Assembly (NCBI RefSeq): GCF_030684315.1
Contig: NC_081387.1
Coordinates: forward strand, 16,895,409 to 16,959,408
DNA length: 64,000 bases
Direction: 5' to 3'
Source of the DNA: Stegostoma tigrinum
Lineage: Eukaryota
Position 1 is the first letter of the stretch. Each line of letters starts with the position of its first letter. The notes beneath the pieces were generated by a model. The model had not been told where the DNA came from, did not search any database, and saw only the letters and a list, made by a program, of their open reading frames with translations. Shown piece after piece: positions 690-55,363 of this stretch. A program made the translations under genes and the position numbers.

Positions 690-995
690 ATGGAAAGGAC
701 CGTACATTTGGTGCTATTGGTTTGTCAGTTTTACTGGATCCTGAGTGTGAAGCTAATCTCAGCAACAGAGAAGTTTTATGGACATACACTGGCAGCAATG
801 GGAAGCCTGTAAATATTCTGGATTATGTGCCAAATTACACAAAAGCAGAACCAAATGAACGCTTTAGATCTCGTTTACATTTTAATACATCGAATGGGTC
901 CTTGATTTTAGAGAATTTAAAATCCAGTGACCAAGGCATTTTTGCCATTTTTGTAGATGGACAAAAGAAGTGGACTACAGATTTGCAAGTCATTG
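690..995 (+). CDS. Gene A exon: IgV-like domain lacking the canonical B-F disulfide (CD2/SLAM/CEACAM-type N-domain)
   Basis: Acceptor ttgttcag|A, donor G|GTAAGT; 306 nt, phase 1/1. Encodes GKDRTFGAIGLSVLLDP..EVLWTY..FRSRLHFNTSNGSLILENLKSSDQGIFAIFV..DLQVI, with V-set motifs W(C strand), R-L, NGSL, D-x-G-x-F. The signal exon must lie upstream of the window. Confidence 0.9.
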
Positions 996-1879
996 GTAAG
1001 TGTTTTCAATACTTTTCCTGATTTGGAACTGATACACATTTCAGCATAAGAACTATTCAGAATGTCGGTCAATAAGAATGCGATTGTTGTTCAGTCCCTC
1101 AATCCTGTTTGTCATACTCTTAAATCACGTTTGGTCTGTACTGTACCACACCTCCATTTACCTGTCTTTGGCCCTTATCTTCCACATTCATTACCCTTCC
1201 GAAATTCCTGTTGATCTCAATCTTGCAAATCCTAATTGACCCAGCAGCCACAGTTGCTGACAGTAGAATTCCACTGTTTTTATTCTCTGTAATGTTAAAA
1301 TGTTCCTCTGATTTTAGTGTAAAATGGCTTGAATCTAAATTTGCAATTATGAGTTAAATTATGCCAGAAGATTTGAACTAAGTATCAGGGAGATGCTTTG
1401 AAGTGGAGAAGTAAGGAAAATCTACATTGTAGTCCCTCTGAGACCCAGTAGAGTTTTCCTAAGGCGTGCTGCCCACATTTACTATTAGTACTCCCAAGTG
1501 GCGTCTAACCAGGGTTTTGGTTGACTGCAGCATAGTTCTGTATCCTTGTACTCTAATGCTCTAGCCATAAAGACCAGCATTCCATTAACTTCCTTGATTA
1601 TTTCCTGTATCTGTCAGTGACATTTTACAGATCTATGCATGTGAAACGCCCCCCGCCAAGTCTCTTTGGACGTCCGATGTAATTAATTTCATATCAACTG
1701 AACACTACCTTGATCTATCCCAAAATGGATAACTTCACACTTGCTTGCACTCAACTCCATCTGCCACAATTGGGTCTATTCATTTTTTTTTCAGTCAGTA
1801 TCCCTTTGTAATTTTATGCTACATTCTTCCTGCTCAGTGTCCTCATTTTCCTCAGACTGCGCCACAATTCCCAGCTCTT

Positions 1880-2114
1880 TGGCCTCCATCCATCCCCTCG
1901 CTTTTTCGCTCCCACAATTGTGTGCAGAATGGCAGGCTGAGATTATGTAGCGGAGCCTGGCCTCCATCCATCCCCTCGCTTTTTCGCTCCTGCAATTGTG
2001 TGCAGAATGGCAGGCTGAGATTATGTAGCGGAGCCTGGCCTCCATCCATCCCCTCGCTTTTTCGCTCCTGCAATTGTGTGCAGTATGGCAGGCTGAGATT
2101 ATGTAGCGGAGTCT
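1880..2114. repeat. Minisatellite, 3 x 78 bp
   Basis: Unit ggcctccatccatcccctcgctttttcgctcc...attatgtagcggagcct starts at 1881, 1959 and 2037; copies nearly identical. Confidence 0.95.
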
Positions 2115-2699
2115 GTATGGAGTGTATTGCAAAGTTTTCCCATTTCCAGTCCAAGCACTGAAGCCTCATCTTCAGCAAGCCTATTGTCTGCTCCATGATG
2201 ATTCTAGTTGAGGAATGGGCTGTGTGTTTTTTTTTTCTACGCTCACCCTAAGTCAATGGGATATGTAGTGAAGTCATTAGCTAAAGATGAGGTTGGCACT
2301 TTGTCTGCCAGTAACCGTCCTGCTCTCGAATTGAAACAGGAGCACGGATGTTCTTGAGCATCTCGGCATTCTGACGGCTCCCATGCCGCCCACCAGCTTG
2401 CCTACTCTTGATGACCGTTTGCAATACTTTCATGTTTTTTGTCATCTGCAGAATATGCCCTGTACGATCCAAATCTAGGTTTTTAATATGACTGAGGAAT
2501 GCAGTGTGTCCAAGAAGGAACCCCTGGGGTTCCTCCACAGTAAAACTTCACCCAGTCCAAAAAAGCGAACTGCTCACTACTACTGTTTGCTGTCCCTCTG
2601 GGTATGTTGTTTCTATGTGAACTCTGACCTCTGGGCTTTAGTTTGCTAATAAGTCTGTTGTGTGGCCCCCTTATCAAATGCTTTATTAAGCTCAAGAGG

Positions 2700-3145
2700 A
2701 TTCAGAAGAGATTTGCCAGGATGTTGTTGGGTATGGAAGGTTTGAGTTATAAAGAAAGGCAGGGACTTTTTCACTGGAGCGTAGGAAGTGGAGATTTTTA
2801 TAGAGATTTGTGAAATCATGAGGGGTATAGATAGGGTTAATGGTTGGTATCTTTATAAGATGGTGGGTTGTTTTTAAAGAGTGGAAGGAGGAGGTGAGAG
2901 GAGAAACATTTAACAAACCCTTCACACAGGGTGGTTCACGTGTGGAATGAGCTTCCTGAGCAAGTGGTGGATGAGGGCGCTGGAAAACACTTTAAAAAGA
3001 CACTTAAATAAGTACATGAATAGGAAATGTTTGGAGGTATATGGACCAGGAACAAGATGGTGGGACTACTTTATTTTGGGTTATGGTCGGCATGAGCTGG
3101 TTGGACCGAAGGTTCTGTTTCAGTGCTGTATATCTCTATGGACTC
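2700..3145 (+). mobile_element. CR1 LINE 3' end
   Basis: Decayed ORF2 C-terminus followed by the tail ggaccgaagg..ctgtttcagtgctgtatatctctatg. Confidence 0.8.
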
Positions 3146-3560: not shown

Positions 3561-3663
3561 GGGTCCCAACCCGAAACGTCAAGCTTTCCTGCTGCTTGGC
3601 CTGCTGTGTTCATCCAGCTCTAACCGTGTTATCTCAGATCAGCATTGGCAGTTCCTACTATCT
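3561..3663 (+). mobile_element. Short PLE terminal-repeat fragment with 15-bp TSD
   Basis: ctggtaactttacaa at 3546-3560 and 3664-3678 flanks cccgaaacgtcaagc..ctactatct. Confidence 0.8.
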
Positions 3664-4235: not shown

Positions 4236-4244
4236 TCCCAGGAT

Positions 4245-5653: not shown

Positions 5654-5923
5654 AACCGCTGTCGAAACCGTTGATCTTCAGTAATTCCTCCTTTGTGGAT
5701 ACAACCATTGAACTGACTTGTCAAGTGCTTCGGGGGAATGCAACTTCCATTCTGTGGTGGAAAGATGGCACTTTGTTACCCGATAATCAGCACTTCCTGT
5801 TACTGCAAAACAACAGCAGATTGATTATTTCTGCAGCCAAAAAATCCGACTGTGGCATCTACACTTGCGCTGTGGAAAACCCTGTCAGCAAGAAGAATAA
5901 TACATATTTGCTTCCTGTTTACG
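5654..5923 (+). CDS. Gene A exon: IgC2 domain
   Basis: cccacag|AA ... G|GTGAGT; 270 nt, phase 1/1. EPLSKPLI..LTC..WWKDG..DCGIYTCAVENPVS..LPVY is the typical C2 signature of the CD2/SLAM/CEACAM families. Confidence 0.93.
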
Positions 5924-8668: not shown

Positions 8669-8785
8669 GTCTTTCACAGTGGCATTACTGCACCTTGGGA
8701 TTGTCCATCGCTACGCTGATTAATCTTGCTGTTGTTTCTTTAATCCACAAGATTACTTTGTGTGTACAGCAAGCCAAAATACCAT
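8669..8785 (+). CDS. Gene A exon: TM1
   Basis: tttcag|GT ... T|GTAAGA; 117 nt, phase 1/1. GLSQWHYCTLGLSIATLINLAVVSLIHKITLCVQQAKIP, homologous to gene B exon 48188-48295 (LSQ..CTLGLSI). Confidence 0.82.
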
Positions 8786-8893: not shown

Positions 8894-9040
8894 ATGAGAG
8901 AGGCGAACGTAATGATGGGAAAACAGGCACAAATGTAGGGTTGAAGTTACCTGAATGCGTAGAAAAATTCTTGCAGCTCCTCCTGAAGCTTTCATTTCTC
9001 CTTCTTTTGGCTGCATTTGTGTTTTGGATGTATATCGAAG
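8894..9040 (+). CDS. Gene A exon: cytoplasmic loop plus TM2
   Basis: cgacag|AT ... G|GTAATG; 147 nt, phase 1/1, open. YERGERNDGKTGTNVGLKLPECVEKFLQLLLKLSFLLLLAAFVFWMYIE; the C-terminal half matches gene B exon 48488-48571. Confidence 0.78.
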
Positions 9041-9934: not shown

Positions 9935-10495
9935 ATAATGTGGTCGCCTCTACATTAGGGAGATGGAACATAGACTGCTTTGTGGAACACCTACGTTCTG
10001 TTAGTTTAAAAATAACCTGAGCTTCCAGTTGCTTGGCACTTCAACATGCCACTAGGTTTCCGACAATCATATTTCTGACTCCAGCCTGCCGCATTGCTCC
10101 AGTAAGGCTTGGTGGAAGCAGAAGGAACAACTTTTTATTTTGTCTGGGGACCTTACAGCCTTCAGGACTCAATATTGAGTTAAATCATTTTAAAGCCTGA
10201 ACATGACCTTCCATGTCTTTTACTGACCGCCATACCTTGGGACCTGTCACTGACATGGGCTGCTTTCAGCAAACCAGCCCACCCTTATTTGTCCAAATAT
10301 CACCTATTGAGCTTTTTCATTTTCCTTGGCTTACTGTCAACAATCCCTTTGTCTTCTACTGTTTTTTAACCTCTTTCAGTTCCATCTCCACCTCTCTACA
10401 CTCTCCTTTCTCCCACCAACCCCTCTCATTCCCACATCATCAGTATACATACTACCTTTTCCCAGCTGCCATGAGTTCTGAGGAAGGATATGAAG
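9935..10495 (+). mobile_element. Old Penelope GIY-YIG 3' fragment
   Basis: Decayed CGRLYI..ELPVAWHFN..LGTLQPSGLNIE, ending in a ttctgaggaagg hammerhead remnant. Confidence 0.7.
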
Positions 10496-10897
10496 ACATT
10501 CTGTATGATCTGAAATCAGGAATGGCTTGCAATACAGCTCATTTCTCAATATTGTCCAGTCATCTGATCAGTGAAGGTCGTATTTTATTGTCCATTGACT
10601 GACTCCCAAATGAAGCTACAAAAACCATCATGAATCGTGATATAAAACACAAATATTGGAGAAACTCAGCAACTGTGGAAAATAAAACAGTTAATGTTTC
10701 AAGTCTAGTATGACTTCAAAATTTTTACTGATAAATAGTAACATTGCATTGGTTTTGTTACGGTATTGTAACTACAGAAATGATAGTCATGTGTATGCTA
10801 CATATTATTCTCGTTTCGAATGGCACTTTGAACTTCATAACTTTGTTTTTCTTGAATAGGTGAATGTATAATTTTATTTACTCTGTTCTTTTCATAG

Positions 10898-10993
10898 GAT
10901 TTGCTGTAATCACTGTGATCACAGTGGTGTTTCTGACTCTGTTTCTAATTCCAACTGCAATATGGAGCAGAAATAACCAGAACAACTCAGCAG
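10898..10993 (+). CDS. Gene A exon: TM3, 5' part (runs into a Penelope insertion)
   Basis: ttcatag|GA; GFAVITVITVVFLTLFLIPTAIW aligns with gene B EVATIIVIVLVVLCLLLIPTVLL. The 3' boundary is an inferred cryptic donor CAG|GTCTGT inside the repeat. Confidence 0.65.
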
Positions 10994-11493
10994 GTCTGTC
11001 AAGAGAAATCAGAGTTAACATTTTGGGATCCAATGGCCCTTCTTCAAAATTGATGGTAGCTGGGAAAACATATTCTTTTTTATCCCCTTGTGCAGAAGAT
11101 AGCGTCGGGGGAGGGGGGTAAGGGGTAAATAATAGGTGAGGGATAGAGCCCAAAGAACGAGAGACACGCCCAAAGGATGGGTAATGGTCAGCCTAGGGTA
11201 ATGCATGGCTGTTAATGGGGACGACAGGGGCTCACTATTGGCTGTGTGCAACAGCAGATCATGTGAATGCAAGGCCTAGTGTGTGAGGATTGGGTAAGGA
11301 TATGAGAGAAGTTGTCTTATGCCCTAAAATTTTTGAACTCGATATTGAGTCCAGAAGGCTGTAGAGTTCCCAAGCAGAAAATCAGATACCATTCTTCTGT
11401 CTTGCACTGAGTTTCATTGGAGTGCTGCAGCTAGACAGATGTTGGCCAGGGAGCAAGGTGGTTTGTTGAAGTGGCAGGCAACAGGAAGTTCAG
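10965..11493 (-). mobile_element. Penelope 3' fragment inserted within the gene A TM3 exon
   Basis: Minus strand reads ELPVACHFNKPPCSLANI..YLIFCLGTLQPSGLNIEFKNF. Terminal repeat ctcagcaggtctg..agagttaacatttt at the left end. Confidence 0.8.
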
Positions 11494-11535
11494 ATTGTTG
11501 GCTTTTTAAGAAGGCTTGCACCCTGAACTGGATGG
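11494..11535 (+). CDS. Gene A: remainder of the TM3 exon after the insertion
   Basis: Begins where the PLE remnant ends (ttcag|AT). Reads DCWLFKKACTLNWM and ends at a strong phase-1 donor G|GTAAGA; 42 nt. The acceptor has a poor pyrimidine tract. Confidence 0.5.
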
Positions 11536-13641: not shown

Positions 13642-13737
13642 TTTTCAGCCTTTTTCTGAGTGCATTCGATCTATACGGTGACGTACTCATTGTGTGTCTG
13701 CCGGGAATCCTGATAAAAGAAACACTCGTACGTTCTG
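13642..13737 (+). CDS. Gene A exon: TM4
   Basis: ttttgcctccag|TT ... G|GTGAGT; 96 nt, phase 1/1. VFSLFLSAFDLYGDVLIVCLPGILIKETLVRS, homologous to gene B GEIAVICLSASLI. Confidence 0.78.
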
Positions 13738-15864: not shown

Positions 15865-15965
15865 GCAAAGGATGTGAGCCAGCGCCCAGTCTGCAAACTA
15901 GTCTAATTCTTGCTCTGGTGGTGCCATTCATTTTCCTTTTGATATCCCTTTGCCTGGTATATTGT
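15865..15965 (+). CDS. Gene A exon: extracellular KGCEP loop plus TM5
   Basis: tttcag|GC; KGCEPAPSLQTSLILALVVPFIFLLISLCLVYC, a clear paralog of 52053-52154. Donor is TGT|GTAAGT (phase 0) or the alternative A|GTAAGG at 15969 (phase 1). Confidence 0.85.
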
Positions 15966-40601: not shown

Positions 40602-40695
40602 ATGAGGATCCTCAATGAATACTTCTTGACAAAATGTGCCTTCAACTTACTTCAGCTGTTTATTCTACTGAGTTACTGCATCCAAATTACCAGTG
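40602..40695 (+). CDS. Gene B exon: signal peptide
   Basis: aaccATG (A at -3) ... G|GTGAGT, phase 1. MRILNEYFLTKCAFNLLQLFILLSYCIQITS-G has a hydrophobic core and small residues at the cleavage site; in frame with the V exon. Confidence 0.8.
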
Positions 40696-42710: not shown

Positions 42711-43186
42711 TCTCTTCAAATTTTGAGGTCTGTTCAGACCAGGATTAAACTTTGTGTAAATAAACTGAGTCAAATTTAAATAAAAGCTTTGGTGACTAAC
42801 CTCTGTTCTAATTCATGTGAGTGGGGGATCACGTGCTGCAGAAAACCACCAGTGAATTGTCTGTAATCTTCTGTCCACTAACAGTATTTGACAAATTGTT
42901 GGCTTCACTCCAGACCTTTTCTACTGCTTGTGAGGCACCTCCCTTTCAGTGATTCAACATCAGCAAAGTGTGCCCTAGGGATTTTCCACAGTGGCATTTG
43001 GAAATGGTGGAGAGTATACATGCTGTAATGTTGAAACAGGCCACAGTGACTTTGCACCATAGAGTTCAGTGGCTGTCTTATTGACAGTAAAAGGTGATTC
43101 ACAGGTCCAATCTCAGCACGTGAAACAGTGCCAAAATCTCACTACACTTTGTATGCAACAATCACTGTTTCTATTATTGCTCATAG

Positions 43187-43513
43187 GCAATGTCAAAATG
43201 GAATCTTACCGTGCTCCCGGAAGCTCTATGTTCTTCCCTGGAGTTGATGAGTATGAACGGAGCACAACAAAATTTTACCAATGGAAAGTGTCCAATGGGG
43301 GTACAAAGAATGGGCTCAGTGCGGGAGTGCTACTGTTTCACGTTGGGGCTGCAGAACCTTCAGTATTAAATAAGTACACACGTCGCCTTGAATTCTTCCC
43401 AACCAATGGATCGTTCATCCTTCATCATTTAACTTCTTCAGATGAGGGTCTTTATACACTTCCCATCAATCTACGTGATATCATCATTCAAAATGTTCAG
43501 CTATGGATAGTAG
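43187..43513 (+). CDS. Gene B exon: Cys-free IgV-like domain
   Basis: ctcatag|GC ... G|GTATGC; 327 nt, phase 1/1. ..YQWKV..YTRRLEFFPTNGSFILHHLTSSDEGLYTL..VQLWIV. Confidence 0.9.
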
Positions 43514-43584
43514 GTATGCTTGTTTCATGAATTTAAGCGGCAATGATCTGTGCTATGGGAAAATACATCAGATGTACCTACGTA

Positions 43585-44590: not shown

Positions 44591-45952
44591 CCTGAAACGC
44601 AAGCCACAGGAGGGGCATGGGTGGAGTGTGAAACTTATGTCAGACATCCTGCCAGCCCACCTACCTGCCCCTGCAGGTACTTTGGTGTTCAGGTACTTGC
44701 AGACTAATTTAGTTCTTAACTAACCAGTTAATGAGCTGTTCAGTGAACCTTTCACCAGCTTTCAATTCAGTGGATGATAAGGAGTATGGGAATGATACAT
44801 TTGCCCCCTGATCCTCCAATGGACAGGCAGATCTCTCTTGCACTTTCTTCCACCTCCATACTTGATGATTGTAGTAAAATTCCACCGTCCACTCTTGCAG
44901 GATACAAACCTGGGTTCCTAGAACATTACCGTGGTATCTGGATGGCTAGTCGCAATACCACTGGGCCACTACCTCCCCATTTTAATAAGTCACCCTGCTA
45001 TTGCTATCAATAAATGGATTCTGTTAATGTTAAAGGTGAAGAAGGAAGCTCACCATCACCTTCTCAAGGGCAACTAGGGACAGATAAATGTTGGCCCAGT
45101 CAGCGACATACACATTTGGCGAATGAAGAGAAAAAGCACTTTGGTTCTAGTAACTGCAGTGTGCATAAGGATAGTGCACTATCATCCTTTAGCTATGAGA
45201 GACAGTACATTTTGTGTGCCAGTCTGGAACTTTTGACAACACTAAATGAGACAACAGAAACCAACTTGTTAATTAATTTGGTCCTTCAAAACAGATTGGG
45301 TTAATGCTCTTGTTAAATTGACAAGTAAAAGCATTACTGGAAAACTAGATTAATCCAAAATAAAATGGAAAGTGCTGGACTGCTCACAAGGTCTGGCAGC
45401 ATCTGTGAAGACAGAAAAGTCTGATTTCAAGTAAAATCGGACTCTTGCAAGACTTAATGTAGCGACCCAGCTGCACATTGCTGAAGGAGTGCTGTATTAT
45501 CGAAGCAGTCTTTTTTTTTTGATGACACTCTTTAGAGCATGGCCCCAACTGCCAACTTCACTGGTTTGGGAGGAAACTAAGAATCTCCACTTTTGAGAGG
45601 AAACCATTAGGAAGAAATGTCCTGACTTGAAACGTCAACTTTCCTGCTGCTCTGATGCTGCCTGGCCCGCTGTGTTCCTCCAGCTCCACACTCTTGTCCC
45701 CAACTCCAGCAGTTCTTACAATCTCTGCTGTCCTGATGAATATTATTCTAAGTGCTGTAAAACTGCATCATCAGACCATTCGTTGCGTTTCTGACTTCGA
45801 TAAAATGACAGACAAATTCACCACTGTGTTCTTTACACAACTGTCCCTTAAAATAAATACATCTCCTTTCTTTTGAACACACATTTTGCGAGCATTGTGA
45901 AGGATGGGGTTAGGGTTAGTGCAATTATTTATTCAGTATTTCTCTCTTTCAG

Positions 45953-46213
45953 ATAAGCTGTCAAATTTTCTGATATTAAGCAGATGCAGCTTCCCCCAGC
46001 CTGCCATCATGCTGACCTGTAATGTTTCTGGACATCCTCATGAGTATCAATGGCTGAAAGATGGAGGGAACATCTCTCGCCGTCACCGACTAGTAGATGG
46101 AAACAGAAGCCTCATCATTCTGAATGATGGGAAAGATGACCGTGGCATGTATACTTGCATTGCAATCAATCCTGTCAGCTCTGTCCAAGCTCATTATCTG
46201 TTAACTATTAATG
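45953..46213 (+). CDS. Gene B exon: IgC2 domain
   Basis: tctctctttcag|AT ... G|GTAAGC; 261 nt. LTCNVSG..YQWLKDG..GNRSLII..DRGMYTCIAINPVS..LLTIN. Confidence 0.93.
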
Positions 46214-47109
46214 GTAAGCTGTGTTTTGCACATAATTTCAAGAATAGGAGCATGGTTAGGAGAAATTCCTTCACTCGGTGTTGTTGAGCCATTTTATCAC
46301 AAGGAATGTTTGAGACAGATCATGCTTGAATGGAGAGACAACTGGTTTTACAATGTTACAATTTCCAAGTGTTCCGTGCAATGTATATTGATTGCCCCAA
46401 ATCATGTTTTGCTACGGTTACTTGTTAGTACAGATTGTGCTCGTTATGGGGAAAAAAAATGCATGTTGCCAAAGTTTTTCAGCTTGCACTCATCAGGAGA
46501 AATGGAAGAATACCAAATAATATTTATTATGTGAGCAACAGGGTGCTGACCAGTTGGCAATTGTGTTCTGATGGCCAAGTCTTTAGGCATCAAGAATGGG
46601 CAAGAAACACTTTACCGAAGCTTTAAATTTAAATTTAATCAGGGTGAGTCAACTTAAATTCACCAATGTGTTTAGTAAATGTGTCTTCCAAGCTTTAGCT
46701 TAAATTAAAGGGTGTAGGGCCTGGACGAAGTGCCTTTTAGCTGCAGGGGACTCAGCCCTTCATGTGAATGTAAGGAGCCTCTCGTATGTATAAGTGAGTC
46801 ACTTTGCAAACTGATGATCTTCGGTTGGTTATTGAGTGATTCTTGGCAGCCTCTGAACATTTTACTAAGTGCTGCCCAAGTGTGGAGTCAGATCAAATTG
46901 GGAAACTATGTTCTACAATTTCTAAGTTTGGGCTTATTGAGCACTACCAGTACTCTGCCTGCCATGGACATTTGAAGGGTTGGCTGTTTAAAGTGGTTCT
47001 GATGTTTAGCCTACACACTTGGTGTCATGCCAGCACTGAACTTCATGGAATACGTTACTGAATCTGCATGGTTAGCAGAAGGTCTTTTTCAGGTTTGATC
47101 GCAGCATCC

Positions 47110-47505
47110 TATAAATTGAAGGTATTGGCTATGAGGAAAGATTGGACAAACTTGGTTTGTTTTTACTTGAATGTCGGAGGCTGATGGGTGACCTGATTAG
47201 AAGTTTACAAAACTACAAAAGGGATGGATAGAATGGATAGTTGGAGTCTTTTTCCCAGGGTAGCAATGTCAAATAATCTGTGGCATAGGCTTAAGGTAAA
47301 AGCGAGAAAGTTTAAAGGTACTGTAACAGGCAAGTATTTTACATAGAGGTTGGTAAGTGCCTGGAATGTACTGCTAGAGGAGTAGTAGAAGCAGATTCAA
47401 TAGGAGCATTTAACAGGCATCTGCATTGATGTATGAATGGGCAGGGAATCGAGGGATACAAAACACAGAAGCCAAAGGGCGTTCTTCAGTTTAGAAAGGT
47501 GTCTT
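47110..47505 (+). mobile_element. CR1 3' fragment
   Basis: YEERLDKLGLF..RRLMGDLI..YFYIEVGKCLE-type decayed C-terminus. Confidence 0.7.
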
Positions 47506-48187
47506 GTGTCGGGGCCGGGGGGGGGAAGAAGAAAACGGTTCATGTTCTCTGACTATTTCTGAGTCAAGCCATCAGTCAACTCCACTGCACTCAAATAAAA
47601 GAGTGGCAGTTGTTGGAGATCTGAAACGATGGACTCGCAACATTAACTCCATTTTCTCTCCAAAGATGCCACCCGACCTGCTGAGTTTCTCCAGCAATTT
47701 CTGTTTTTGTTTCACTTGCCCTCAGCCCTGACCGAAGACATTAATCTGAAAACTTAACGTTGCACATTTTCATGGTAGCAGAAGAGCATTGGGCGGCCAG
47801 CACAAACTGATATCGTACATGAGGAAATTGGACAGTCACAACATTTACCAGGAAAATCTCAGCGAAGTTCAGTGTCTTTCAGACAGACAACAAACTGTAG
47901 GAAACAGAGCACTGGTTATGTATGATATGCTTCTCGTCTTGCAGTTGAAACACATTGTTGATGCATAGCTGAGAATGTGTCACACTGCCTGTAAGTGTAT
48001 TGTAGCTCATCTTGAAAGAGTTAGTGTGGGGAGAGGGTGACAACCAAATATTGCATTGGATGCTAAGTGCAAAATGTCCTATTTCAAGCACTCCAGACTG
48101 TCTTGTGAACTGCATTTTTAAGGAAAAGCAGACACTTTGTGGAAGCTTTGAAAACGTGATAAGTTTAACGTAAGTTCTCTGTTTCAG

Positions 48188-48295
48188 ATTTGTCACAAAT
48201 TCGTGACTGCACACTGGGATTGTCCATATCTTCGCTGGTCACTGCTGCTTCTGCCTTTATCTGCACAATAATTTCATGCTACAAGGCTGAAAGAT
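48188..48295 (+). CDS. Gene B exon: TM1
   Basis: ctgtttcag|AT ... T|GTAAGA; 108 nt. DLSQIRDCTLGLSISSLVTAASAFICTIISCYKAER. Confidence 0.85.
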
Positions 48296-48487
48296 GTAAG
48301 AGCAAACTATTTCTAGAGTTTGGTGTCAAAAATTTAAAAATATCATACGTTAACAATGGAAGCAATGTTAAACAAGTAAGTATTGCCCTTGTTATTTTAA
48401 ATTCAGTTCCATTGTATGGAGTGACTGATTTGAATGTGCATATTATTTTCTTAAGTAATATTGATTTGAATGTACTTATTACTCTAG

Positions 48488-48571
48488 ATCTCCAGTTTCT
48501 TAAATATGGATTAGAAATCTTGGCATTGGTCCTTCTTACTGCAGTGCTTGTGTATTGGATTGTAATTGGAG
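48488..48571 (+). CDS. Gene B exon: TM2
   Basis: ttactctag|AT ... G|GTACTG; 84 nt, phase 1/1. YLQFLKYGLEILALVLLTAVLVYWIVIG. Confidence 0.78.
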
Positions 48572-48977
48572 GTACTGTACTCCTGTTTCTTTGCCCTTAC
48601 ACTGTATTGTAGAAATACAATTATCTGCCAAATTAAATTCAAGTTTAAAATTTGAGGACAGGCATTTTTTCAAAATCGTCTGTTTTATAATAAAAGCCCA
48701 ATTTGTTCACCTGATTTTGGAAGTGTCCAATTGATCCTTCAGCATGCTTTCAAAGACCTTTTAAAGTCAGCTGTAATTAAGTTCCTGATGCAATAATCCC
48801 ATCCTGAAAGCCCAAATATTAAGCCTCCTGCATTCCCCTCAATGTGATCGTAAAAGCCCCGTTCAGTATATATTGGGCATTCTTTTATATACTGAGATGG
48901 TGAATTAACCAGTGAAGGTATTTGCTCTTTATTCCATGAATGTGTGTAATTGTATTTGGTTTTTGTCTATTCAATAG

Positions 48978-49097
48978 AAGTTGCAACAATCATAGTGATT
49001 GTGTTGGTGGTCCTGTGTCTGCTGCTAATCCCAACTGTGTTATTGACATTGATGGCTTGTGATGTGATAAGTTCCACGGAGACCTCGAAGATCAAAA
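48978..49097 (+). CDS. Gene B exon: TM3 plus cytoplasmic loop
   Basis: ttcaatag|AA ... A|GTAAGT; 120 nt. EVATIIVIVLVVLCLLLIPTVLLTLMACDVISSTETSKIK. Confidence 0.85.
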
Positions 49098-49831
49098 GTA
49101 AGTTCACCTGTACTTTATGGACTTACATTGTGCTGCCAAAAGGCTCATGATCAGATACAGGGATGGTGAGAATGTGCTTCTCCTTGGGGTGCATATTGAG
49201 CGAGTGATCGGGAAATTTGTTTGAGGGAGTGATTTGAAATTTAGATTTGTCGCATTTCTGGTGAATTTTAAGAATTGGTCGGAGGAAATTGCAGCAGGTT
49301 GGTTAGTATCCAACTATAGTGGATCCAGTTGTAGATCCCAAGGAGATACACCGTCCTTGCTGTCAGTGAATCTGTTGAAGGATGGAGCAGGCTCAAGGGG
49401 CTGAATGGCCTACTCCTATTTCTCATGGTCTGGTATAACTCTTCCTCTGGTCTGAGGAAGTGATACCCAACTCAAAATGTTGTCTCTGGTTCTCTCTCCA
49501 CAGGTGCTGCCAGACCAGCATTTTTTTTGTGATTGTTTTGGATTTCTACCTTTTTATAGGAAGATGCAAACAGCCTCCACTTTTTAATCTGTTAATTTTT
49601 AAGTGGATAAAGTATTCAGCAGATTGTAAAGATGTGTGCTTTTCCCTTCCCAACCTGTGTTTTCATTTGATCCAATAATCCCGAGCACAGGATTAGGAAA
49701 AGTTGCTCTGTACTTCTCTTTTTGACCAGTTGCGCTCGCCAGATGCGCGGCAAGAGACAAACAGATCAGCATTCGAGTTCATCTGTGACAGCTAAGTATG
49801 TAATCAGCAATTCCGATCTATTTATTGCCAG

Positions 49832-49930
49832 CTTACGTTTTGATGGTCGTGGGTGTGCTATCTACGTCGGGTGAAATTGCTGTGATATGTCTGTCTGCAT
49901 CCTTGATTGCAGGGATAACCTATCCAGGTG
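49832..49930 (+). CDS. Gene B exon: TM4
   Basis: ttattgccag|CT ... G|GTGAGT; 99 nt. TYVLMVVGVLSTSGEIAVICLSASLIAGITYPG. Not in the ORF track; found by homology to gene A. Confidence 0.8.
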
Positions 49931-50756
49931 GTGAGTTGGAAATGCGTAAAATGGATAGCTAACACATCTGTTCTGAACGTAACATCCCGTCAGCAATTAT
50001 GTGATTCGGCGACGTAATTGCTGAGTTGTTTCAGCCCGTTCCCAATGAATACTGTTCATAGCCTCCTTTTACACTGGAAAGATGAGACAATGAGGTCCAC
50101 TGTGTATGCACTACCTCTTTACTCGACCATTACAAATTTAGCCACACTGTTCTGCAGTCTCCTCCTAGCCCTGTATTACTTCCCAATATTTATCCAGTTT
50201 TCTCCTCTTAAATCCAACGGTTCCCATTGCAACTACTCTCTATATAGTGAAATGTTCTGTATGTGAACAGATATCTCTTCCAAACTAAATCTTAATGAAC
50301 TCAGTTGTATAATTAAGCTCTAAAACTGTCGAATCTAAGAGCTACATAAAAATACACAGCAGAGAAAAAGACCACTTGGCCTAACCAGTCTCCATCAACA
50401 TTAATGATCTACTCAAACATTCTCTTCTTCCTTTCCTGCTTAACTCCTCAAACATAACCTAACATTTTCATTTCTCTTTTTCAAATGCTACCTCGTTAAA
50501 ATTGAATTGTACTAATTCTTTCCTGCAAGTATATGACAAGATAGCATGTTCTACATTCTCTCCTCTTGTTGGAAATGATGTCTTATGAATTCCTTTGTCA
50601 AATTTTGATAATGCTTTAAAAGCCATTGAGTCTATTGTCAGTGTTTTCATTTCAAGAGAGGCAGGGACTACAATTCTGGAGTCTCTAAACTAAATTCAGA
50701 GGAGACCCAGGACTTCTCATTTCAACTCCTGCAGCCTCTTGTGTGGATCAATTAGT

Positions 50757-51815
50757 GTAACCAGGAAAATTAGGATCAGCAGTGTAGAATACTTTTAAGT
50801 ATGAAGGTCCTTTTCGAGAGCTGGTGTTTTAACCAGGAGGAAAGCACAATGCTCTGTTGATTCTGGGCCACTCTGGTTAGTTCCATGGGGGAGCAAGTTG
50901 GCATTTCAGCCTTCCTAGTTCATGTTGGAAAGGGAATCGAATGGAGAAAACTATTTTTATCCAAAAGTGAAAACAACTGAATATTTGTTATTTATTTCTA
51001 TACAATCAGTGATCCAAGTGAATTTGTTTCCAACAGAATTAATTATTTTCTGTTTTAGCATCAGGTTTGTTACAAAGTTGGGTAGAGTATTCATGAACTG
51101 GAAAGCAGGAAGTTGGAATGATTGGTTTAAAAGTATTGTAGTGTTGGTAAAGAGTGCCTGGTTCCTTTAACAAAAAAAATCACGCTTTGTCTACACTTGG
51201 AAGTTGCACACACTATACAGAAAACCTTAAGTGAAAATTACATTAAAAAAGCAGTCTTGTTGTCAAAACATGTTTTGAATTTGGCCAGTTAATTTAAAAC
51301 AAGCATTCAGTGATTCAAAGCCAATTGAACTTAATAACTGGCGGTGGTGACAACATTGACCCAATTCGACTGAAGAAATACTGTTGTCATCACGGGTATA
51401 CAGATGAGGGCATTTGGAAAATCGAACAAGAGCCACCTGCGGTCTGCAGCAAAAGCAAGTCAGCTATCTGAGACATAAACCTGGTTTTCACAAATAATTT
51501 TAAACTCCTCTTTAAAAAGCCACTTCAAAGGTCCCAATGAATTTTGGGACTTTTGTTTATTTGAACAGTATTCAAGTAGAATTTAGACCAGTTGGGAGTT
51601 GTTAGTAGTCTGGGGGGGAAATTGTCAGCTTATTAGTAATTGTGTTAATTTGTTCATTGTTAGGGTTAAATAAATAAATTGTTTCTTCTTACTTGTAAAG
51701 TGGAGATCAGGGATTTTCTTTCTTTTAATCGATTCCGATGGGCAAGGTAGCTTCTCTGGGGTTTTTTTTTGGAAGGTAATTATTAGAAGGGAACCTGTAC
51801 TCCGATCATAATAGA
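50757..51815 (+). mobile_element. Possible solo LTR
   Basis: Starts tgtaacc, ends ..gatcataata, with an internal aataaa near 51670. No second copy or TSD verified. Confidence 0.25.
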
Positions 51816-52052
51816 TTGCTGCTTGTGTTTTGATTTAGTTATTAGAGGGGTTCAGCCATTTCCCCATTGTAACAGGTTAATGATGCATGTTGTATGTGCT
51901 TTGGGCAATGAATGCTGTTCCTGTAAAGGATGATGATTTCAGCATTTCCATTCAAATGTTTCAAATGATTTGTGTTCTGTATAAAGCCAAACAAAATATC
52001 TTGCATCAAATTCTAACCATCTTTTCTGTTTTTTTGCAATCATATATTGCAG

Positions 52053-52154
52053 ACAAAGGATGTGAACCAGCAGCCAACCTACAATCAAACTTGACTGTTG
52101 CTTCTTGTGTGTCAATTGCTTTCCTATTGGCACTTCTTATCTTTCACGCTATAC
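52053..52154 (+). CDS. Gene B exon: KGCEP loop plus TM5
   Basis: attgcag|AC ... C|GTAAGT; 102 nt. DKGCEPAANLQSNLTVASCVSIAFLLALLIFHAI. Confidence 0.87.
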
Positions 52155-52339
52155 GTAAGTTGATGCGGGTTGTATCAAAAAATTTTCCACTTCCCTCACT
52201 CTCTACCACCACTGAAAGTCTATGTGGGAACCTTTTTTTTTGTATGTTTAGCCCATGACTATCCAGCCACTAACTTTTTGACTGAGTCAACAGAAGCAGT
52301 GGGCTGGGAATGTGAAATTCCACTTAAATCGTGAAAATA

Positions 52340-52910
52340 AAAGAAATGCAGATGCTGGAAATCTGAAACAGAAATTGCTGGGAAAGCTCAACCGGTCTGG
52401 CTGCATCTGTGGATACAAAAGTGTTAACGTTTCAAGTCCAGTGACCCTTCTGCCGAACTGATAGTAGCTGGAAAAAAGTTGGTGTTTGCTGAAGACAGGG
52501 GCATGAGGTGGCTAAAGGATTGAGTGCACAGACAGAGATGGAGCCCAGACACCCAGGGAGAGGAAGGGATGGATGATAAAAAGCCAGAGAGAAAGAAAAG
52601 CTGACAATGAGGACTGTAAGTGGGTGCGTTCAGATTCTAAAGTTGTTGAATCGGCTTTCTGCCTGGTGCACTACCATCCAACCCTCCATCTGCCTGACCA
52701 TTGTTCCCTGTCTGTCTGGGCTCCACGACTACCTATCCACTCACTCCTTTTCTCTCTGCCCCCCCCCCCACCACCGCGTGCATTCAGCGTATAGAGCACT
52801 CCGTCCTCGCTAACATCCATGCTGAGGAAAAGTCACCAAAACTCTGCTGTCTCTCCACCGATGCCGTCAGACATGTTGGGTTTCTCCAGCAATTTGTTTA
52901 TTTTTTCTGA
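52340..52910. mobile_element. Inverted PLE terminal-repeat pair (second family)
   Basis: gatgctggaaatctgaaac..ctggctgcatctgtgg and the reciprocal ..gatgccgtcagac..ttctccagcaatt. Confidence 0.7.
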
Positions 52911-53514
52911 CTCTTACTACCTGGTTAATGTCAGGAGTGTTGGAGTGTGGAAGGTTGGCACATTGGCACTGTGATAGACCCTGGAGTAATATAACTGGGT
53001 ATGGATAGACTGGACAAATGTCAGTTCAGTATCTGCATCAGAGTCCCATGTAAGTGGTCCCATAATCCTTTGTGATCAGGAGACTTCATTCTCGTGAACA
53101 GTGTCTGGTTAATGATGTTTGACTTGGGATTTAGGACGATGAAATCTATTGTCTGAAGTGAATCTGGCTGGATCATTGCAACCTCTGAGGCCTTCTCTCC
53201 ACTGCTGAAACTGTCAGCACCTCAGAGCCCTGGAATTCAGAAAGAAGATTAGTTAATGCAAAAGTGATAACGTAAGGGACATCTTCATAGTTTGAACGTG
53301 CAGTGGCAGGTCATTTCGCCACAGAGACGTTCTTGGTCTAGTTACATACATAAGCAAGAAAGAAATACCCATCTTTTATTTCTTTTTCTCTTGCCAAACT
53401 TGTTGCTTTGCTTTTGTTTGCACATTTCTGTTTGCCAATTATGACACTGCCAGGCCACCCAAGGCTGATGGATAATGTCATCGGGTTTTGAAATGATGGC
53501 GCGAGATTTAACAG

Positions 53515-53558
53515 ATTTCTGCAAAGCTTCTTTGCTTTTTCAGCTGAAGAATTGTGAA
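53515..53558 (+). CDS. Gene B candidate tail mini-exon
   Basis: tttaacag|AT ... GAA|GTGAGT; 44 nt, phase 1 to 0. HFCKASLLFQLKNCE. A stronger competing acceptor at 53543 would give PEEL-stop. Confidence 0.4.
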
Positions 53559-55273
53559 GTGAGTGGAGAGTAATTTCATGCAGCCTGTTAATCTGAAGGT
53601 AGTATGAAGGCTAAAGTTCAACTTGTTTTGAGAAAGATTTTGTTTATTGAAATTCTTTGCTAATTTCACTAAATCACTCTTACTTCCATCATCAACAGTT
53701 GTGAATCGGAATGAAAGGAGATCTAGAAATCGATCTGAAAATGCCAGTGCAAACAACATCGATAAACATGAGCAAGTTGTAAGTATGGGTAATGGAAACA
53801 AGTGACAGTTTAGAGATAGAGCTGTTGCTGTAAATCTTTCCGTAAGTGAGCTTTCGTGATGACTTCACAGCTCATCATAATCAGAAATGGGAATGTTGTT
53901 TTATTTTGCTGCTGTGCCGGAGTAATTTTCAGGGAGAATGCAGAATGTTCTATGAATAGTGGAGCACATGGGTAAGTATGTCCAGGATGAAAACACAAAA
54001 AAAAATGCTGAAAATCACAACGGGGTCAGGCAGCATCCACAGAGAGAACACGCTAATGTTTTGAGTCAAGATGACTCTTCTTCAGAGCATACATTGTGTT
54101 GACTTCTAGCAGTGATGTTTCACCCACACGTGAAGGGGATTCTTTTGCCTCTGTTGTGTTCAGACCACCAATTAATGGGCAATGAAAAAAAAACTTTCCT
54201 CGTTGACAGCATGTACAAGATCGAATTAATGTTGGAACATTGGAAATGCAATAGGCCCTTTATCCTGACCAGCCTGCTCTGCTGTTTACTACAGTTGTGG
54301 ATGATAAGACACTCAGTGCCTTTTACTGAACCCCATCCCATAATGCTGCATACCATAATCTATCAACCCATCTCTACCTTTTTACACATTATTTAACACG
54401 TGAGCTACTGTGGTGGAGAATTCCCAAGATTTGCGACCCTCTGAGTAAAAAGATTTCTCGTCCTGTTCATTGTAAATGGTTTCCCCTTTTTACTTTTAAA
54501 TTATACCCCCGCCCCCGCCCCGAGGCCTAGGCTCCTCAGCCTCGAGTAACCTCTTAACTGCACCTCCCTGACAATCCCTTAAGTATTTTGCAGGTTTCAA
54601 TGAGATCCCCTTCTAATTCTGTGACAGTCCAGAAACTACAGCTCAGTTTGTCCAATCCATCTTCATAGGACAGCTCCACTGTGAACCTTTGCTATGTCCT
54701 GTGAATGGCAACAATATCCTTCCTCTAGTGTAGACCTAGACTGCACACAGCACTCTGCATGTCGTTATACAACTGAAGCAAGACATTACCACTTCCTGAT
54801 AACACATGGCTGCAGCAAACTAACCTTCTGTCACAATAGACAGGGAAAGGCTGTTTTCCCCTTGAGAGACAGTTGTGATAAAAGGAGGGTTATTGTTTAA
54901 AAACAAGCGCTGGCTCATTAAAGAGAGATGAGGAAAAATGAAATCCACTGTGAGGTTTGAGGAAATGCTGTCCTTTAAAACGCTGGTGGACAGAGGAGTG
55001 GGGGAGGTTGGACACTTAATGGGGAAAGTTAATAGAGCAGGAAAATGGAAACTATTGTCATGACACTGGGCCTTAGAGTCACAGATGTGGATTGGAAGAC
55101 TCTGGACAAGGGAGAACAGGATTGGAAGAAATAGGCCTAGCATGTTTCTGCCCACGAGGAGAGGTTCAGTTTCTTGGGGCAGTCAAACTGAAATCAATGG
55201 CTAACATCTTTAATGTGTCTTTTTTATGTCTCTTTGTTTCTTCCCCCCCCCCCCCCCCCCCGCCCCGCTGTAG

Positions 55274-55363
55274 GTGCTAAATGAAGAATCATGTAAATTC
55301 ACTAGCACTGATCTGGGTGAAGAGATGCTTCAAACTGAGAGCACTGTTCTCAAAGAAGAATAG
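55274..55363 (+). CDS. Gene B candidate terminal coding exon
   Basis: Very long pyrimidine tract with poly-C, then tgtag|GTG. VLNEESCKFTSTDLGEEMLQTESTVLKEE-stop in phase 0. Confidence 0.5.
   Translation: MLNEESCKFTSTDLGEEMLQTESTVLKEE

What the first reader, a model, noticed from the sequence alone, without database searches (positions are those of the whole stretch)
690..55363. Two tandem paralogs with identical exon plans point to a diversifying gene cluster
Seen: every gene A exon from IgV to TM5 has a counterpart in gene B, in the same order and with the same acceptor phase. Pairs are LSQWHYCTLGLSI/LSQIRDCTLGLSI, LLLAAFVFW/LLTAVLVYW, LFLIPT/LLLIPT, GDVLIVCL/GEIAVICL and KGCEPAPSLQ/KGCEPAANLQ, while the V domains are barely alignable. 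This independent conservation is the best evidence that the TM exons are real. Inference: an old tandem family with a fast-evolving ligand-binding V domain and a conserved membrane module, as in immune receptor clusters.
Basis: partly seen in the sequence, partly recalled or inferred. Interest (0 to 1): 0.8.

Follow-up and report, generated by a model that had tools for sequence, protein, structure and literature searches.

The report
Tandem shark Ig genes, five-pass anchors
Two neighbouring shark genes each encode a surface protein with two antibody-like domains on a five-helix membrane anchor, a design otherwise known only from the "don't-eat-me" marker CD47, and one of the two genes looks like a patchwork of two older relatives.

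Summary
All ten quoted motifs lie on the + strand. Each gene A exon matches its gene B counterpart better than shuffles do, and the collinear order ranks 1 of 120.

Both genes belong to an unnamed shark family: a CEACAM-like V domain, a C2 domain, five membrane helices with one per exon, and a short tail without tyrosine motifs. I recovered 15 predicted proteins from 6 shark species. Nearly all are named "uncharacterized". I found no paper on the family.

Gene B (40602-55363) is intact and about 86% identical to a whale-shark protein. Gene A has one doubtful splice junction and repeat DNA inside its TM3 exon, so its status is open.

Between orthologues the membrane module is no better conserved than V. 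Gene B is a mosaic: its Ig half groups with one subfamily and its membrane half with another, each at 100/100 support.

No sequence link to CD47 was found. The structure models were too poor to test the fold. No RNA runs were available.

The scan had already noted this family on nearby DNA (s1-881651, s1-920944).

The parts
690..995 (+). Gene A, V-domain exon. It is CEACAM/CD2-type with no canonical Cys pair. Phase 1 at both ends. The leader exon lies upstream of the window.
   Evidence: Pfam V-set at E 2.6e-6. Boundaries. It is 49 of 101 identical to the bamboo-shark proteins P0005 and P0006. No leader candidate lies in 1-689.
5654..5923 (+). Gene A, C2/I-set Ig exon. It carries an extra Cys in the motif DCGIYTC.
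   Evidence: Pfam I-set at E 3e-12. Boundaries. It groups with the type A C2 domains at 100/99 support. Extra Cys shown.
8669..8785 (+). Gene A, TM1 exon. A Cys lies just before the helix.
   Evidence: best 19-residue window, Kyte-Doolittle 2.11. Shuffle z 8.2 against gene B TM1.
8894..9040 (+). Gene A, TM2 exon, with an uncertain start. The acceptor aligned with gene B's (8963) gives TAA at the junction. Acceptor 8894 is in frame. A phase-0 pair (donor 8764, acceptor 8977) is also possible.
   Evidence: Enumeration of donor and acceptor pairs. Hydropathy. 12 of 2000 shuffles reach the score against gene B TM2.
10898..10993 (+). Gene A, TM3 exon. The helix is intact. Repeat DNA enters after about 10960, and an in-frame GT donor lies at 10994 inside it.
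   Evidence: Nucleotide match to gene B runs over 10865-10957, starting in the intron. Repeat matches.
10960..11505 (.). Repeat DNA inserted in gene A's TM3 exon. The approximate ends are read from where similarity to gene B stops and resumes.
   Evidence: Parts match other places in the window: 38507-38552, 10011-10192 (inverted) and 30938-30989.
13642..13737 (+). Gene A, TM4 exon. It is the most diverged exon and has two Asp in the helix.
   Evidence: It is 5 of 31 identical to gene B TM4, with dN/dS about 0.92. 10 of 2000 shuffles reach the score.
15865..15965 (+). Gene A, TM5 exon, starting with the KGCEP loop motif. No tail exons were recognised downstream. Read-through reaches a stop at 16029-16031.
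   Evidence: Shuffle z 11.9. tblastn found no tail match.
40602..40695 (+). Gene B, leader (signal peptide) exon, from ATG to a phase-1 donor.
   Evidence: tblastn gives 91% identity to the first 33 residues of whale-shark P0001/P0002. Sequence.
43187..43513 (+). Gene B, V-domain exon (CEACAM/CD2-type, no Cys).
   Evidence: It is 95 of 108 identical to whale-shark P0003 and 52 of 106 to P0004. Pfam gave no hit for this exon alone.
45953..46213 (+). Gene B, C2 exon. The extra EF-loop Cys is replaced by Arg (DRGMYTC). A new Cys lies near the exon start.
   Evidence: Pfam Ig_3 at E 1.7e-11. It is 72 of 86 identical to P0002. Tree. Cys pattern.
48188..48295 (+). Gene B, TM1 exon.
   Evidence: It is 30 of 35 identical to P0002.
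48488..48571 (+). Gene B, TM2 exon. The junction codon with TM1 is TAT (Tyr), as in the whale-shark model. The 192-base intron before it is open in frame.
   Evidence: P0002 reads ...AER-Y-LQFLK across this junction.
48978..49097 (+). Gene B, TM3 exon. It is absent from the whale-shark model and present in the bamboo-shark models.
   Evidence: It is 17 of 36 identical to P0005. tblastn.
49832..49930 (+). Gene B, TM4 exon, with Gly-Glu inside the helix (SGEI).
   Evidence: It is 28 of 31 identical to P0002. Motif count.
52053..52154 (+). Gene B, TM5 exon (loop motif DKGCEPAANLQ followed by the helix).
   Evidence: It is 30 of 33 identical to P0002.
53699..53778 (+). Gene B, first cytoplasmic tail exon. 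It is basic and has no Tyr.
55274..55363 (+). Gene B, last exon. It is acidic and its stop codon is at 55361-55363.
   Evidence: tblastn gives 83% identity to the last 30 residues of P0001/P0002. Sequence.

Best explanation
The window holds two tandem + strand members of an unnamed shark gene family.

Architecture (shown). Each gene encodes a signal peptide, a CEACAM/CD2-type V domain without the usual disulfide, one C2 domain, and five membrane helices with one per exon. A short cytoplasmic tail follows, without tyrosine signalling motifs.

Gene B (40602-55363; shown). It has ten exons and is intact. It is the counterpart of whale-shark LOC125486895.

Gene A (690 to about 16000; shown). Its first exon lies outside the window. 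It is the counterpart of the bamboo- and epaulette-shark 'type A' genes. It carries a doubtful TM1/TM2 junction, repeat DNA in its TM3 exon and no recognisable tail exons. It is either a modified working gene or a copy that began to decay recently.

Mosaic origin (shown). Gene B joins the Ig half of one subfamily ('type C', whose zebra-shark member is P0004) to the membrane half of gene A's subfamily.

How it works (inferred).
- The V domain binds a partner on another cell or a microbe, as CEACAM N domains do.
- The five-pass block acts as a lateral platform in the membrane, as the multi-spanning domain of CD47 does.
- The block is tied to the ectodomain by a disulfide from the invariant Cys of the TM4-TM5 outer loop. 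The partner would be the extra Cys at the membrane-near end of C2, or in B-type genes a new Cys just before TM1.
- With no motif of its own, it would signal through partners. A conserved acidic residue inside TM4 may recruit one.
For: Exon pairs and their order are shown.

Family.
- phmmer of the gene B TM1-TM2 frame against 1.84 billion representatives gave 1 hit, P0001, at E 1.4e-15.
- Word-based searches gave 4 hits among 3670 candidates, 5 among 6298 and 7 among 4050.
- In all, 15 proteins came from Rhincodon, Stegostoma, two Chiloscyllium species, Hemiscyllium and Scyliorhinus.

Ectodomain.
- The best PDB sequence matches of P0005 are CEA at E 2e-24 and CEACAM1 at E 1.3e-16.
- The AF2 Ig part has pLDDT 75-90. 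Its fold matches CAR, CEACAM1, CD58 and CD48.

Five helices.
- All 10 exon peptides hold a 19-residue window with Kyte-Doolittle score of at least 1.8, and the bamboo-shark proteins show five hydrophobic segments.
- AF2 draws five long helices in P0006. In P0004 it draws six helical elements, because the fourth breaks in two.

Gene B integrity. Every junction codon matches the residue seen in the database proteins.

Mosaic.
- P0002 against P0006 is C2 37% and TM 51%. P0002 against P0004 is C2 71% and TM 27%.
- The C2 tree splits A | B+C at 100/100. The TM tree splits A+B | C at 100/100.
- Per-exon identities of the window's own exons agree.
- pS is higher in the Ig exons than in the TM exons, 0.71 against 0.58.

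Selection on gene A's TM exons. Open frames are kept in 0.4% of 5000 neutral simulations at 0.55 substitutions per site.

Cys pattern.
- The loop GC motif is in 14 of 15 database proteins and in both window genes.
- The EF-loop Cys is in 13 of 16 C2 domains. The three that lack it are all B-type.

Tails. The last 45 residues have no Tyr in 9 of 15 database proteins, and there is none in either gene B tail exon.

CD47 features are taken from passages of PMC10902115 and PMC7206415.
Against: - No RNA evidence exists for this genome. The 4 runs found behave as DNA, with even depth and no splice joints.
- Neither gene A nor gene B turned up as a zebra-shark protein in the databases. This could mean low expression or a defect I did not see.
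- Gene A's aligned TM2 acceptor gives a stop. Its TM3 exon is broken by a repeat. Its TM4 looks nearly neutral.
- The whale-shark model lacks TM3 and most of V.
- The TM bundle was modelled only at pLDDT below 55. The disulfide, the topology and any likeness to the CD47 fold are therefore untested.
- The mosaic rests on unrooted trees of few sequences and on gene models that could themselves be chimeric. Bamboo-shark 'type A' models carry a membrane half closer to gene B than to gene A.
- The difference in pS is marginal, by my own rough estimate about 2 standard errors.
Confidence: 0.68

Rival explanations
1. After an old tandem duplication, the V domain diversified quickly under selection for new ligands, while the membrane module was held constant.
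For: A against B: V is 29 of 95 identical, while TM1 is 15 of 35, TM3 is 11 of 21 and TM5 is 15 of 32. CEACAM-type N domains are known to evolve fast (abstracts of PMC13278318 and PMC5856374, seen in the listings).
Against: - Between orthologues V is as conserved as the membrane module or more so (86 against 76%, 89 against 78%, 56 against 47%).
- Gene B's V is 88% identical to a whale-shark V, the same level as its TM exons.
- The C2 and TM trees disagree at 100/100 support.
- Synonymous divergence is also higher in the Ig half. Selection on the protein does not explain that.
Confidence: 0.12
2. Gene A is a dead or dying copy. The pair is then one working gene (B) plus a pseudogene, and the similarity of gene A's TM exons is a leftover.
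For: - There is a TAA at the TM1/TM2 junction if the aligned splice sites are used.
- Repeat DNA lies inside the TM3 exon.
- TM4 is 5 of 31 identical, with dN/dS 0.92.
- No tail exons were found.
- Gene A's TM2-TM5 are less like the bamboo-shark type A proteins than gene B's are.
Against: - All seven gene A exons keep open frames with usable splice sites.
- An in-frame acceptor (8894) and an in-frame donor inside the repeat (after 10993) exist.
- All five segments stay hydrophobic.
- Neutral drift for the whole time since the split is unlikely, at 0.4%. A short neutral period of 0.1 substitutions per site is not excluded, at 19%.
Confidence: 0.35
3. The five-pass module is a true but very distant homologue of the CD47 membrane domain, so these genes would be shark CD47 relatives that kept a C2 domain.
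For: - The layout is the same: an Ig head, five helices, a short tail and a Cys in the TM4-TM5 outer loop (CD47 features from passages of PMC10902115).
- A bamboo-shark isoform, P0007, has V plus five helices without C2.
- The membrane helices are split one per exon. That the CD47 gene is split the same way is my recollection, backed only by the statement in PMC10902115 that exons 8-13 encode the tails.
Against: - Pfam CD47 membrane family PF04549 (accession recalled) gave no hit at E up to 10 for P0002-P0005, nor at E up to 1 for the single exons.
- A profile of seven membrane modules found no CD47 chain among 177,635 PDB sequences. The only hit was an integrin beta-2 TM peptide at E 0.27.
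- The V domain is CEACAM-like, not CD47-like.
- The ESM Atlas gave nothing.
- The fold could not be compared.
Confidence: 0.15
4. The TM 'exons' are chance open frames or belong to other transcripts, so the five-pass architecture is an artefact of gene prediction.
For: There is no RNA evidence here. Short hydrophobic frames are easy to find by chance.
Against: - The exons are collinear, with rank 1 of 120 orders.
- Gene B exons are 78-91% identical to an independent whale-shark model.
- The same five segments appear in models from five other species.
- Splice phases are consistent, and the junction residues are those seen in the database proteins.
Confidence: 0.03

Closest known systems
CD47 (integrin-associated protein)
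   Same: An Ig head on five membrane helices with a short cytoplasmic tail, and a Cys in the outer loop between helices 4 and 5. In CD47 that Cys makes a long-range disulfide to the Ig domain (passages of PMC10902115 and PMC7206415). One bamboo-shark isoform (P0007) even has the V-only head.
   Different: The head has two Ig domains (V plus C2), and the V is CEACAM/CD2-type without the canonical disulfide. No sequence similarity to the CD47 membrane domain was found by Pfam or by a PDB profile. This is a multigene tandem family, not a single gene. Whether the tail is alternatively spliced is unknown.
CEACAM family (CEACAM1, CEA)
   Same: The best sequence matches of the ectodomain are CEA at E 2e-24 and CEACAM1 at E 1.3e-16. 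The fold matches CEACAM1 with TM-score 0.70-0.72 on the target. The V domain lacks the Cys pair and is followed by a C2 domain with the NRS/TL...DxGxYxC pattern. The genes form a fast-changing tandem family.
   Different: CEACAMs have one membrane helix or a GPI anchor, and often ITIM or ITAM-type tails. Here there are five helices and no tyrosine motif. Orthology and synteny were not tested.
RefSeq predicted shark proteins
   Same: These have the same family and the same exon plan. They are LOC125486895 and LOC125487005 (whale shark), LOC125446600 (zebra shark), LOC122541381 and LOC122541375 (whitespotted bamboo shark), LOC132832737 and LOC132832452 (epaulette shark), and 'HEPACAM family member 2-like' (small-spotted catshark). 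Gene B is 84-91% identical per exon to LOC125486895.
   Different: These are automatic predictions without study or name. Genes A and B themselves were not found as proteins in the databases searched.

Membership tests
CD47 / integrin-associated protein | Sequence match to the CD47 membrane-domain family (Pfam PF04549; accession recalled) or to CD47 chains | tested here: not met
   No such Pfam hit at E up to 10 for P0002-P0005, nor at E up to 1 for the exon frames. The PDB profile search of seven membrane modules found no CD47 chain. P0003's C2 domain gave a weak V-set_CD47 hit at E 0.023, below the cut-off.
CD47 / integrin-associated protein | A single IgV domain as the whole ectodomain | tested here: not met
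   V plus C2 exons are present in both window genes. Only the predicted isoform P0007 lacks C2.
CD47 / integrin-associated protein | Five membrane-spanning helices followed by a short cytoplasmic tail | tested here: met
   Hydropathy of the ten exon peptides and of the database proteins. Five long helices in the AF2 secondary structure of P0006; six helical elements in P0004, where the fourth breaks in two. Gene B's tail is about 55 residues. Topology itself was not tested.
CD47 / integrin-associated protein | Long-range disulfide between the Ig head and the TM4-TM5 loop | tested here: inconclusive
   A loop Cys (GC motif) is in 14 of 15 database proteins and both window genes. A spare Cys at the membrane-near end of C2 is in 13 of 16 C2 domains. 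The bond itself cannot be shown, because the models are unreliable there.
CEACAM family | N-terminal V-like domain without the canonical disulfide, followed by C2-type domain(s), with CEACAMs as the nearest solved relatives | tested here: met
   Gene A's V has one Cys and gene B's has none, and neither has a Cys in the F-strand motif. PDB top hits are CEA and CEACAM1. Fold matches.
CEACAM family | Single-pass or GPI anchorage, with ITIM/ITSM or ITAM-like tails in the transmembrane members | tested here: not met
   Five hydrophobic segments. No Tyr in gene B's tail exons or in the last 45 residues of 9 of 15 database proteins.
CEACAM family | Orthology or synteny with the vertebrate CEACAM locus | not testable with these tools
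Unnamed shark V-C2-five-pass family (RefSeq LOC models) | Significant sequence match over both the Ig half and the membrane half, with the same exon order | tested here: met

The most novel reading that the evidence does not exclude
Sharks keep an expanded family of CD47-like 'surface marker' proteins. In this family a five-pass membrane cassette is a portable module that tandem genes swap between different CEACAM-type heads by exon shuffling. Gene B would be such a swap caught in place. CD47 itself could then descend from a V-C2-five-pass ancestor of this kind by loss of C2. A predicted bamboo-shark isoform already shows that step. The conserved loop Cys and the spare C2 Cys would be the counterpart of CD47's long-range disulfide.
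Probability: 0.2. Interest if true: 0.8.

Novelty: new variant of a known kind. Interest (0 to 1): 0.55.

Why it matters
CD47 is, as far as the papers I saw say, an atypical Ig-superfamily member because of its multi-spanning domain (PMC10902115 and PMC7206415, passages). Its origin is not explained in them.

This finding is a whole family of Ig proteins on five-pass anchors, present in at least two shark orders and arranged in tandem. It would give a second, independent or ancestral, example of that design. It would also offer a natural experiment on what the five-pass block does, because the same block is found under two different heads.

For comparative immunology it adds an unstudied branch to the CEACAM/CD2-like adhesion and recognition molecules of cartilaginous fish.

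For annotation, gene B is an intact gene that I did not find among the database proteins of this species.

Tried and rejected
- Pfam on single exons. The TM exons gave nothing, as expected for 30-40-residue pieces.
- RNA evidence. The look-up of sequencing runs listed only 4 runs of one study, none on record as RNA. Read laying showed even single-copy depth over gene B's exons, repeats in its introns and no splice joints, so these are DNA.
I therefore have no synteny, no codon-based dN/dS across sharks and no breakpoint mapping.
- Structure. Two AF2 jobs gave a mean pLDDT of 51.8 and 61.9, with the membrane module below about 55 in both. I did not use the models for the helix bundle. The Foldseek search speaks only for the Ig part. 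I did not run the VIA searches, because they drop low-confidence stretches.
- ESM Atlas on the membrane module gave no usable hit.
- mafft --addfragments misplaced some short gene A fragments: TM3 landed on TM5 columns and TM5 on TM1 columns. I rely on pairwise alignments for gene A's TM exons and use the figures only for gene B.
- My first regular expression for the extra C2 Cys was wrong and returned nothing. It was corrected.
- Rejected: more family exons elsewhere in the window. tblastn with all 15 proteins found none at E up to 1 beyond chance-level hits. The long ORFs elsewhere look like retroelement or low-complexity frames by eye.
- Literature. Seven searches found no paper on an Ig protein with a five-pass anchor in sharks or on a multi-pass CEACAM. 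Of PMC4079198, PMC13278318, PMC7206415 and PMC10902115 I saw only the passages returned by 'find'. Of the others I saw only search listings. I asked for no supplements.
Whole-protein work used database proteins only. Sums over exons are arithmetic on per-exon counts.

Full report
WHAT IS THERE

All ten peptide motifs of the finding are on the + strand at the stated places. Around them I defined exons by their AG/GT borders.

Gene A has these exons:
- V at 690-995
- C2 at 5654-5923
- TM1 at 8669-8785
- TM2, ending at 9040
- TM3 at 10898-10993
- TM4 at 13642-13737
- TM5 at 15865-15965

Gene A's leader exon is not in 1-689, so it lies upstream of the window.

Gene B has ten exons:
- leader at 40602-40695
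- V at 43187-43513
- C2 at 45953-46213
- TM1 at 48188-48295
- TM2 at 48488-48571
- TM3 at 48978-49097
- TM4 at 49832-49930
- TM5 at 52053-52154
- two tail exons at 53699-53778 and 55274-55363, with the stop at 55361-55363

The last coordinate is the end given in the finding. The window has no N run.

IS THE SIMILARITY REAL?

Local alignments of the stop-to-stop frames beat 500 composition-preserving shuffles in every pair. The z-scores were V 12.1, C2 23.5, TM1 12.3, TM2 4.9, TM3 5.7, TM4 4.8 and TM5 9.7. Only TM2 was reached, by 1 shuffle.

On the exon peptides alone with 2000 shuffles, the observed score was reached 0, 12, 0, 10 and 0 times for TM1 to TM5.

Generic helix-to-helix likeness is not the cause. 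In the 5x5 table each matching pair is the best of its row and column, and the collinear order ranks first of 120.

At the DNA level, the TM1, TM3 and TM5 matches are also seen by blastn. The TM3 match starts in the intron before the exon.

All ten TM exon peptides hold a 19-residue window with a Kyte-Doolittle mean of at least 1.8.

SPLICE PHASES

In gene B every junction is consistent, and each junction codon gives the residue found at that place in database proteins.

In gene A the V, C2, TM1, TM3, TM4 and TM5 acceptors are phase 1, as in gene B. The TM1/TM2 junction is the exception:
- The donor equals gene B's (T|GTAAGAG).
- The acceptor that aligns with gene B's (exon start 8963) then makes TAA.
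- An upstream phase-1 acceptor at 8894 keeps the frame. It gives Tyr, as in gene B, and adds 23 residues to the inner loop.
- A weak phase-0 pair (8764/8977) is a third option.

Gene A's TM3 exon keeps its helix. After about 10960, similarity to gene B stops and repeat DNA follows, up to about 11505. A GT at 10994 inside the repeat is in the right phase.

No tail exons of gene A were found.

WHAT FAMILY IS IT?

Pfam sees V-set in gene A's V exon and I-set/Ig_3 in the C2 exons. It sees nothing in the TM exons.

I searched exon by exon and made no joined model. The one open frame of gene B that happens to span TM1, its 192-base intron and TM2 (48169-48609) was run against 1.84 billion representative proteins. 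It hit a single protein, P0001, at E 1.4e-15. P0001 is whale-shark 'uncharacterized protein LOC125486895'.

From that protein and its relatives, three word-based searches gave 4 hits among 3670 candidates, 5 among 6298 and 7 among 4050. In all there are 15 proteins of about 11 loci, from six species:
- whale shark
- zebra shark
- two bamboo sharks
- epaulette shark
- small-spotted catshark

Twelve of the 15 are named 'uncharacterized protein'. One is 'hypothetical protein', one 'HEPACAM family member 2-like' and one 'VEGFR2-like'.

They fall into two subfamilies:
- Type A (P0005-P0009) has the motif KGCE in the TM4-TM5 loop.
- Type C (P0004, P0010-P0015) has the motif QGCS.

B-type proteins (P0001, P0002) are discussed below. 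An alignment shows invariant residues in the membrane half: A-L...W in TM2 and G-C before TM5.

THE ECTODOMAIN IS CEACAM-LIKE

- P0005's best solved relatives are CEA at E 2e-24 and CEACAM1 at E 1.3e-16.
- The V domains lack the usual Cys pair.
- The confident Ig part of the second AF2 model matches CAR, CEACAM1, CD58 and CD48.

THE MEMBRANE HALF HAS NO KNOWN RELATIVE BY SEQUENCE

- There was no Pfam hit, including the CD47 membrane family, at E up to 10.
- A profile of seven membrane modules found only an integrin beta-2 TM peptide at E 0.27 among 177,635 PDB sequences.
- The ESM Atlas gave nothing.
- Both AF2 models have pLDDT below about 55 there. The fold could not be compared with CD47.

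What is shared with CD47 is the plan: an Ig head, five helices, a short tail and a Cys in the outer loop before the last helix. In CD47 that Cys is tied to the Ig domain (passages of PMC10902115 and PMC7206415).

In this family the loop Cys is in 14 of 15 database proteins and in both window genes. A spare Cys two residues before the Gly of the DxGxYxC motif of C2 is in 13 of 16 C2 domains. The three that lack it are all B-type (P0001, P0002, window gene B). Those instead have a Cys just before TM1 and one near the start of C2.

From the known geometry of Ig domains, the E-F turn lies at the membrane-near end of C2. A loop-to-C2 disulfide is therefore a reasonable inference, but it is not shown.

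It is absent from type A of the bamboo sharks and from type C. It is not a family-wide staple.

TESTING 'FAST V, CONSERVED MEMBRANE MODULE'

Between orthologues the membrane module is no better kept than V:

| Pair | V | C2 | TM |
|---|---|---|---|
| P0006 vs P0009 | 86% | 89% | 76% |
| P0010 vs P0012 | 89% | 91% | 78% |
| P0004 vs P0010 | 63% | 71% | 58% |
| P0004 vs P0014 | 56% | 62% | 47% |

Gene B against whale shark gives these per-exon identities:
- V 95/108, against P0003
- C2 72/86
- TM1 30/35
- TM2 21/27
- TM4 28/32
- TM5 30/33

So V is not the fast part.

The A/B contrast has another cause. B-type proteins are close to type C in the Ig half and close to type A in the membrane half:
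- P0002 against P0004 is C2 71% and TM 27%.
- P0002 against P0006 is C2 37% and TM 51%.

The C2 tree, which includes the two window exons, splits type A plus gene A from everything else at 100/99. Gene B sits next to P0002 at 100/99.

On database proteins, the strongly supported split is A | B+C for C2 and A+B | C for the membrane module, each at 100/100.

The window's own exons say the same:
- Gene B's V and C2 are nearer P0004.
- Gene B's TM2-TM5 are nearer P0005.
- Gene A's V, C2 and TM1 are nearer P0005.

Synonymous differences between A and B are also higher in the Ig exons than in the TM exons (pS 0.71 against 0.58). This fits two ages, though the difference is marginal.

I conclude that gene B arose by exon shuffling or gene conversion between tandem paralogues. 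According to an earlier follow-up of this scan (s1-881651), a zebra-shark gene of this V-C2-five-pass design lies 12 kb upstream of the window. I take it to be the type C gene (P0004, LOC125446600), but I did not test that or its position.

ARE THE TM EXONS UNDER CONSTRAINT?

Across A and B, the Nei-Gojobori estimates are dN/dS 0.50 for the TM exons summed. TM4 is 0.92 and TM5 is 0.31. dS is close to saturation, so these are rough.

A simple simulation starting from gene B's exons shows that neutral change of 0.55 substitutions per site would leave all five frames open in 0.4% of 5000 runs. Change of 0.1 per site would do so in 19%.

Gene A's membrane exons were therefore kept by selection for most of their history. 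A recent loss of function is not excluded.

EXPRESSION

Expression could not be tested. The four runs found are DNA-like: about 10-20x even depth over the exons, very high depth over intronic repeats and no splice joints. They do confirm the assembly of 46500-52400 and show that gene B's TM exons are single-copy at 95% identity.

Neither gene A nor gene B appeared as a protein of this species in the searches.

NOVELTY

The gene models of relatives are in RefSeq, but they are unnamed. Seven literature searches found nothing on such proteins. The CEACAM evolution papers I could check by passage do not mention multi-pass forms.

This scan had already flagged the family on neighbouring DNA and 11 Mb away (s1-881651, s1-920944).

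VERDICT

The evolutionary reading should be changed from 'fast V on a conserved anchor' to 'tandem family that reshuffles Ig heads and five-pass anchors'. The likeness to CD47 is one of design. It is not shown to be descent.

Noticed in passing
window 48296-48487: The intron between gene B's TM1 and TM2 exons is 192 bases, a multiple of three, and is open in frame. The whole stretch 48169-48609 is one open frame. A retained intron would therefore add 64 residues to the inner loop without breaking the protein.
   Followed up: no
window 10960-11505: Repeat DNA sits inside gene A's TM3 exon. Parts of it match other places in the window, one of them inverted just upstream at 10011-10192. A GT in the right phase lies inside the repeat at 10994. 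I did not check the element's identity.
   Followed up: partly
database proteins P0003 (whale shark LOC125487005) and P0007 (bamboo shark isoform X2): Two variant architectures occur among the predictions. P0003 has V and C2 joined directly to a single TM5-like helix (AGCNATNLIW...). P0007 has V joined to the five helices without C2, which is the CD47 layout. Because the number of helices is odd, TM1-only or TM5-only forms keep the same orientation.
   Followed up: partly
window 47091-47878, 49258-49651, 51622-51818, 52213-52400: These intronic stretches of gene B have read depth in the thousands to tens of thousands, against 10-30 over the exons. They are very abundant interspersed repeats.
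   Followed up: no
window 50337 and 51618: There are two single-base differences between the two sampled individuals, A>G at 50337 and G>A at 51618. Both lie in gene B's introns.
   Followed up: no
window 19285-20007 (+), 33407-33836 (+), 39246-39707 (-): These open frames share a motif of the kind ...LQLYK.LV.PHLEYC.QFWSP... They look like C-terminal pieces of a retroelement protein, present in several decayed copies between the two genes.
   Followed up: no
window 56100-56810 and 30700-31900, 62700-63400: These are proline/serine-rich and glycine-rich low-complexity open frames on both strands. They recur with near-identical wording at 30.7-31.9 kb and 62.7-63.4 kb, so they are repeat units rather than genes.
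   Followed up: no
TM4 exons: window 13642-13737 and 49832-49930, and database proteins: An acidic residue sits inside the fourth helix. It reads SGEI in 7 of 8 type A and B-type proteins (P0009 has SGKI) and in gene B. It reads YGD in gene A, and D-G-S or D-A-S at the start of the helix in type C. It could be a docking point for a partner with a basic membrane residue.
   Followed up: partly
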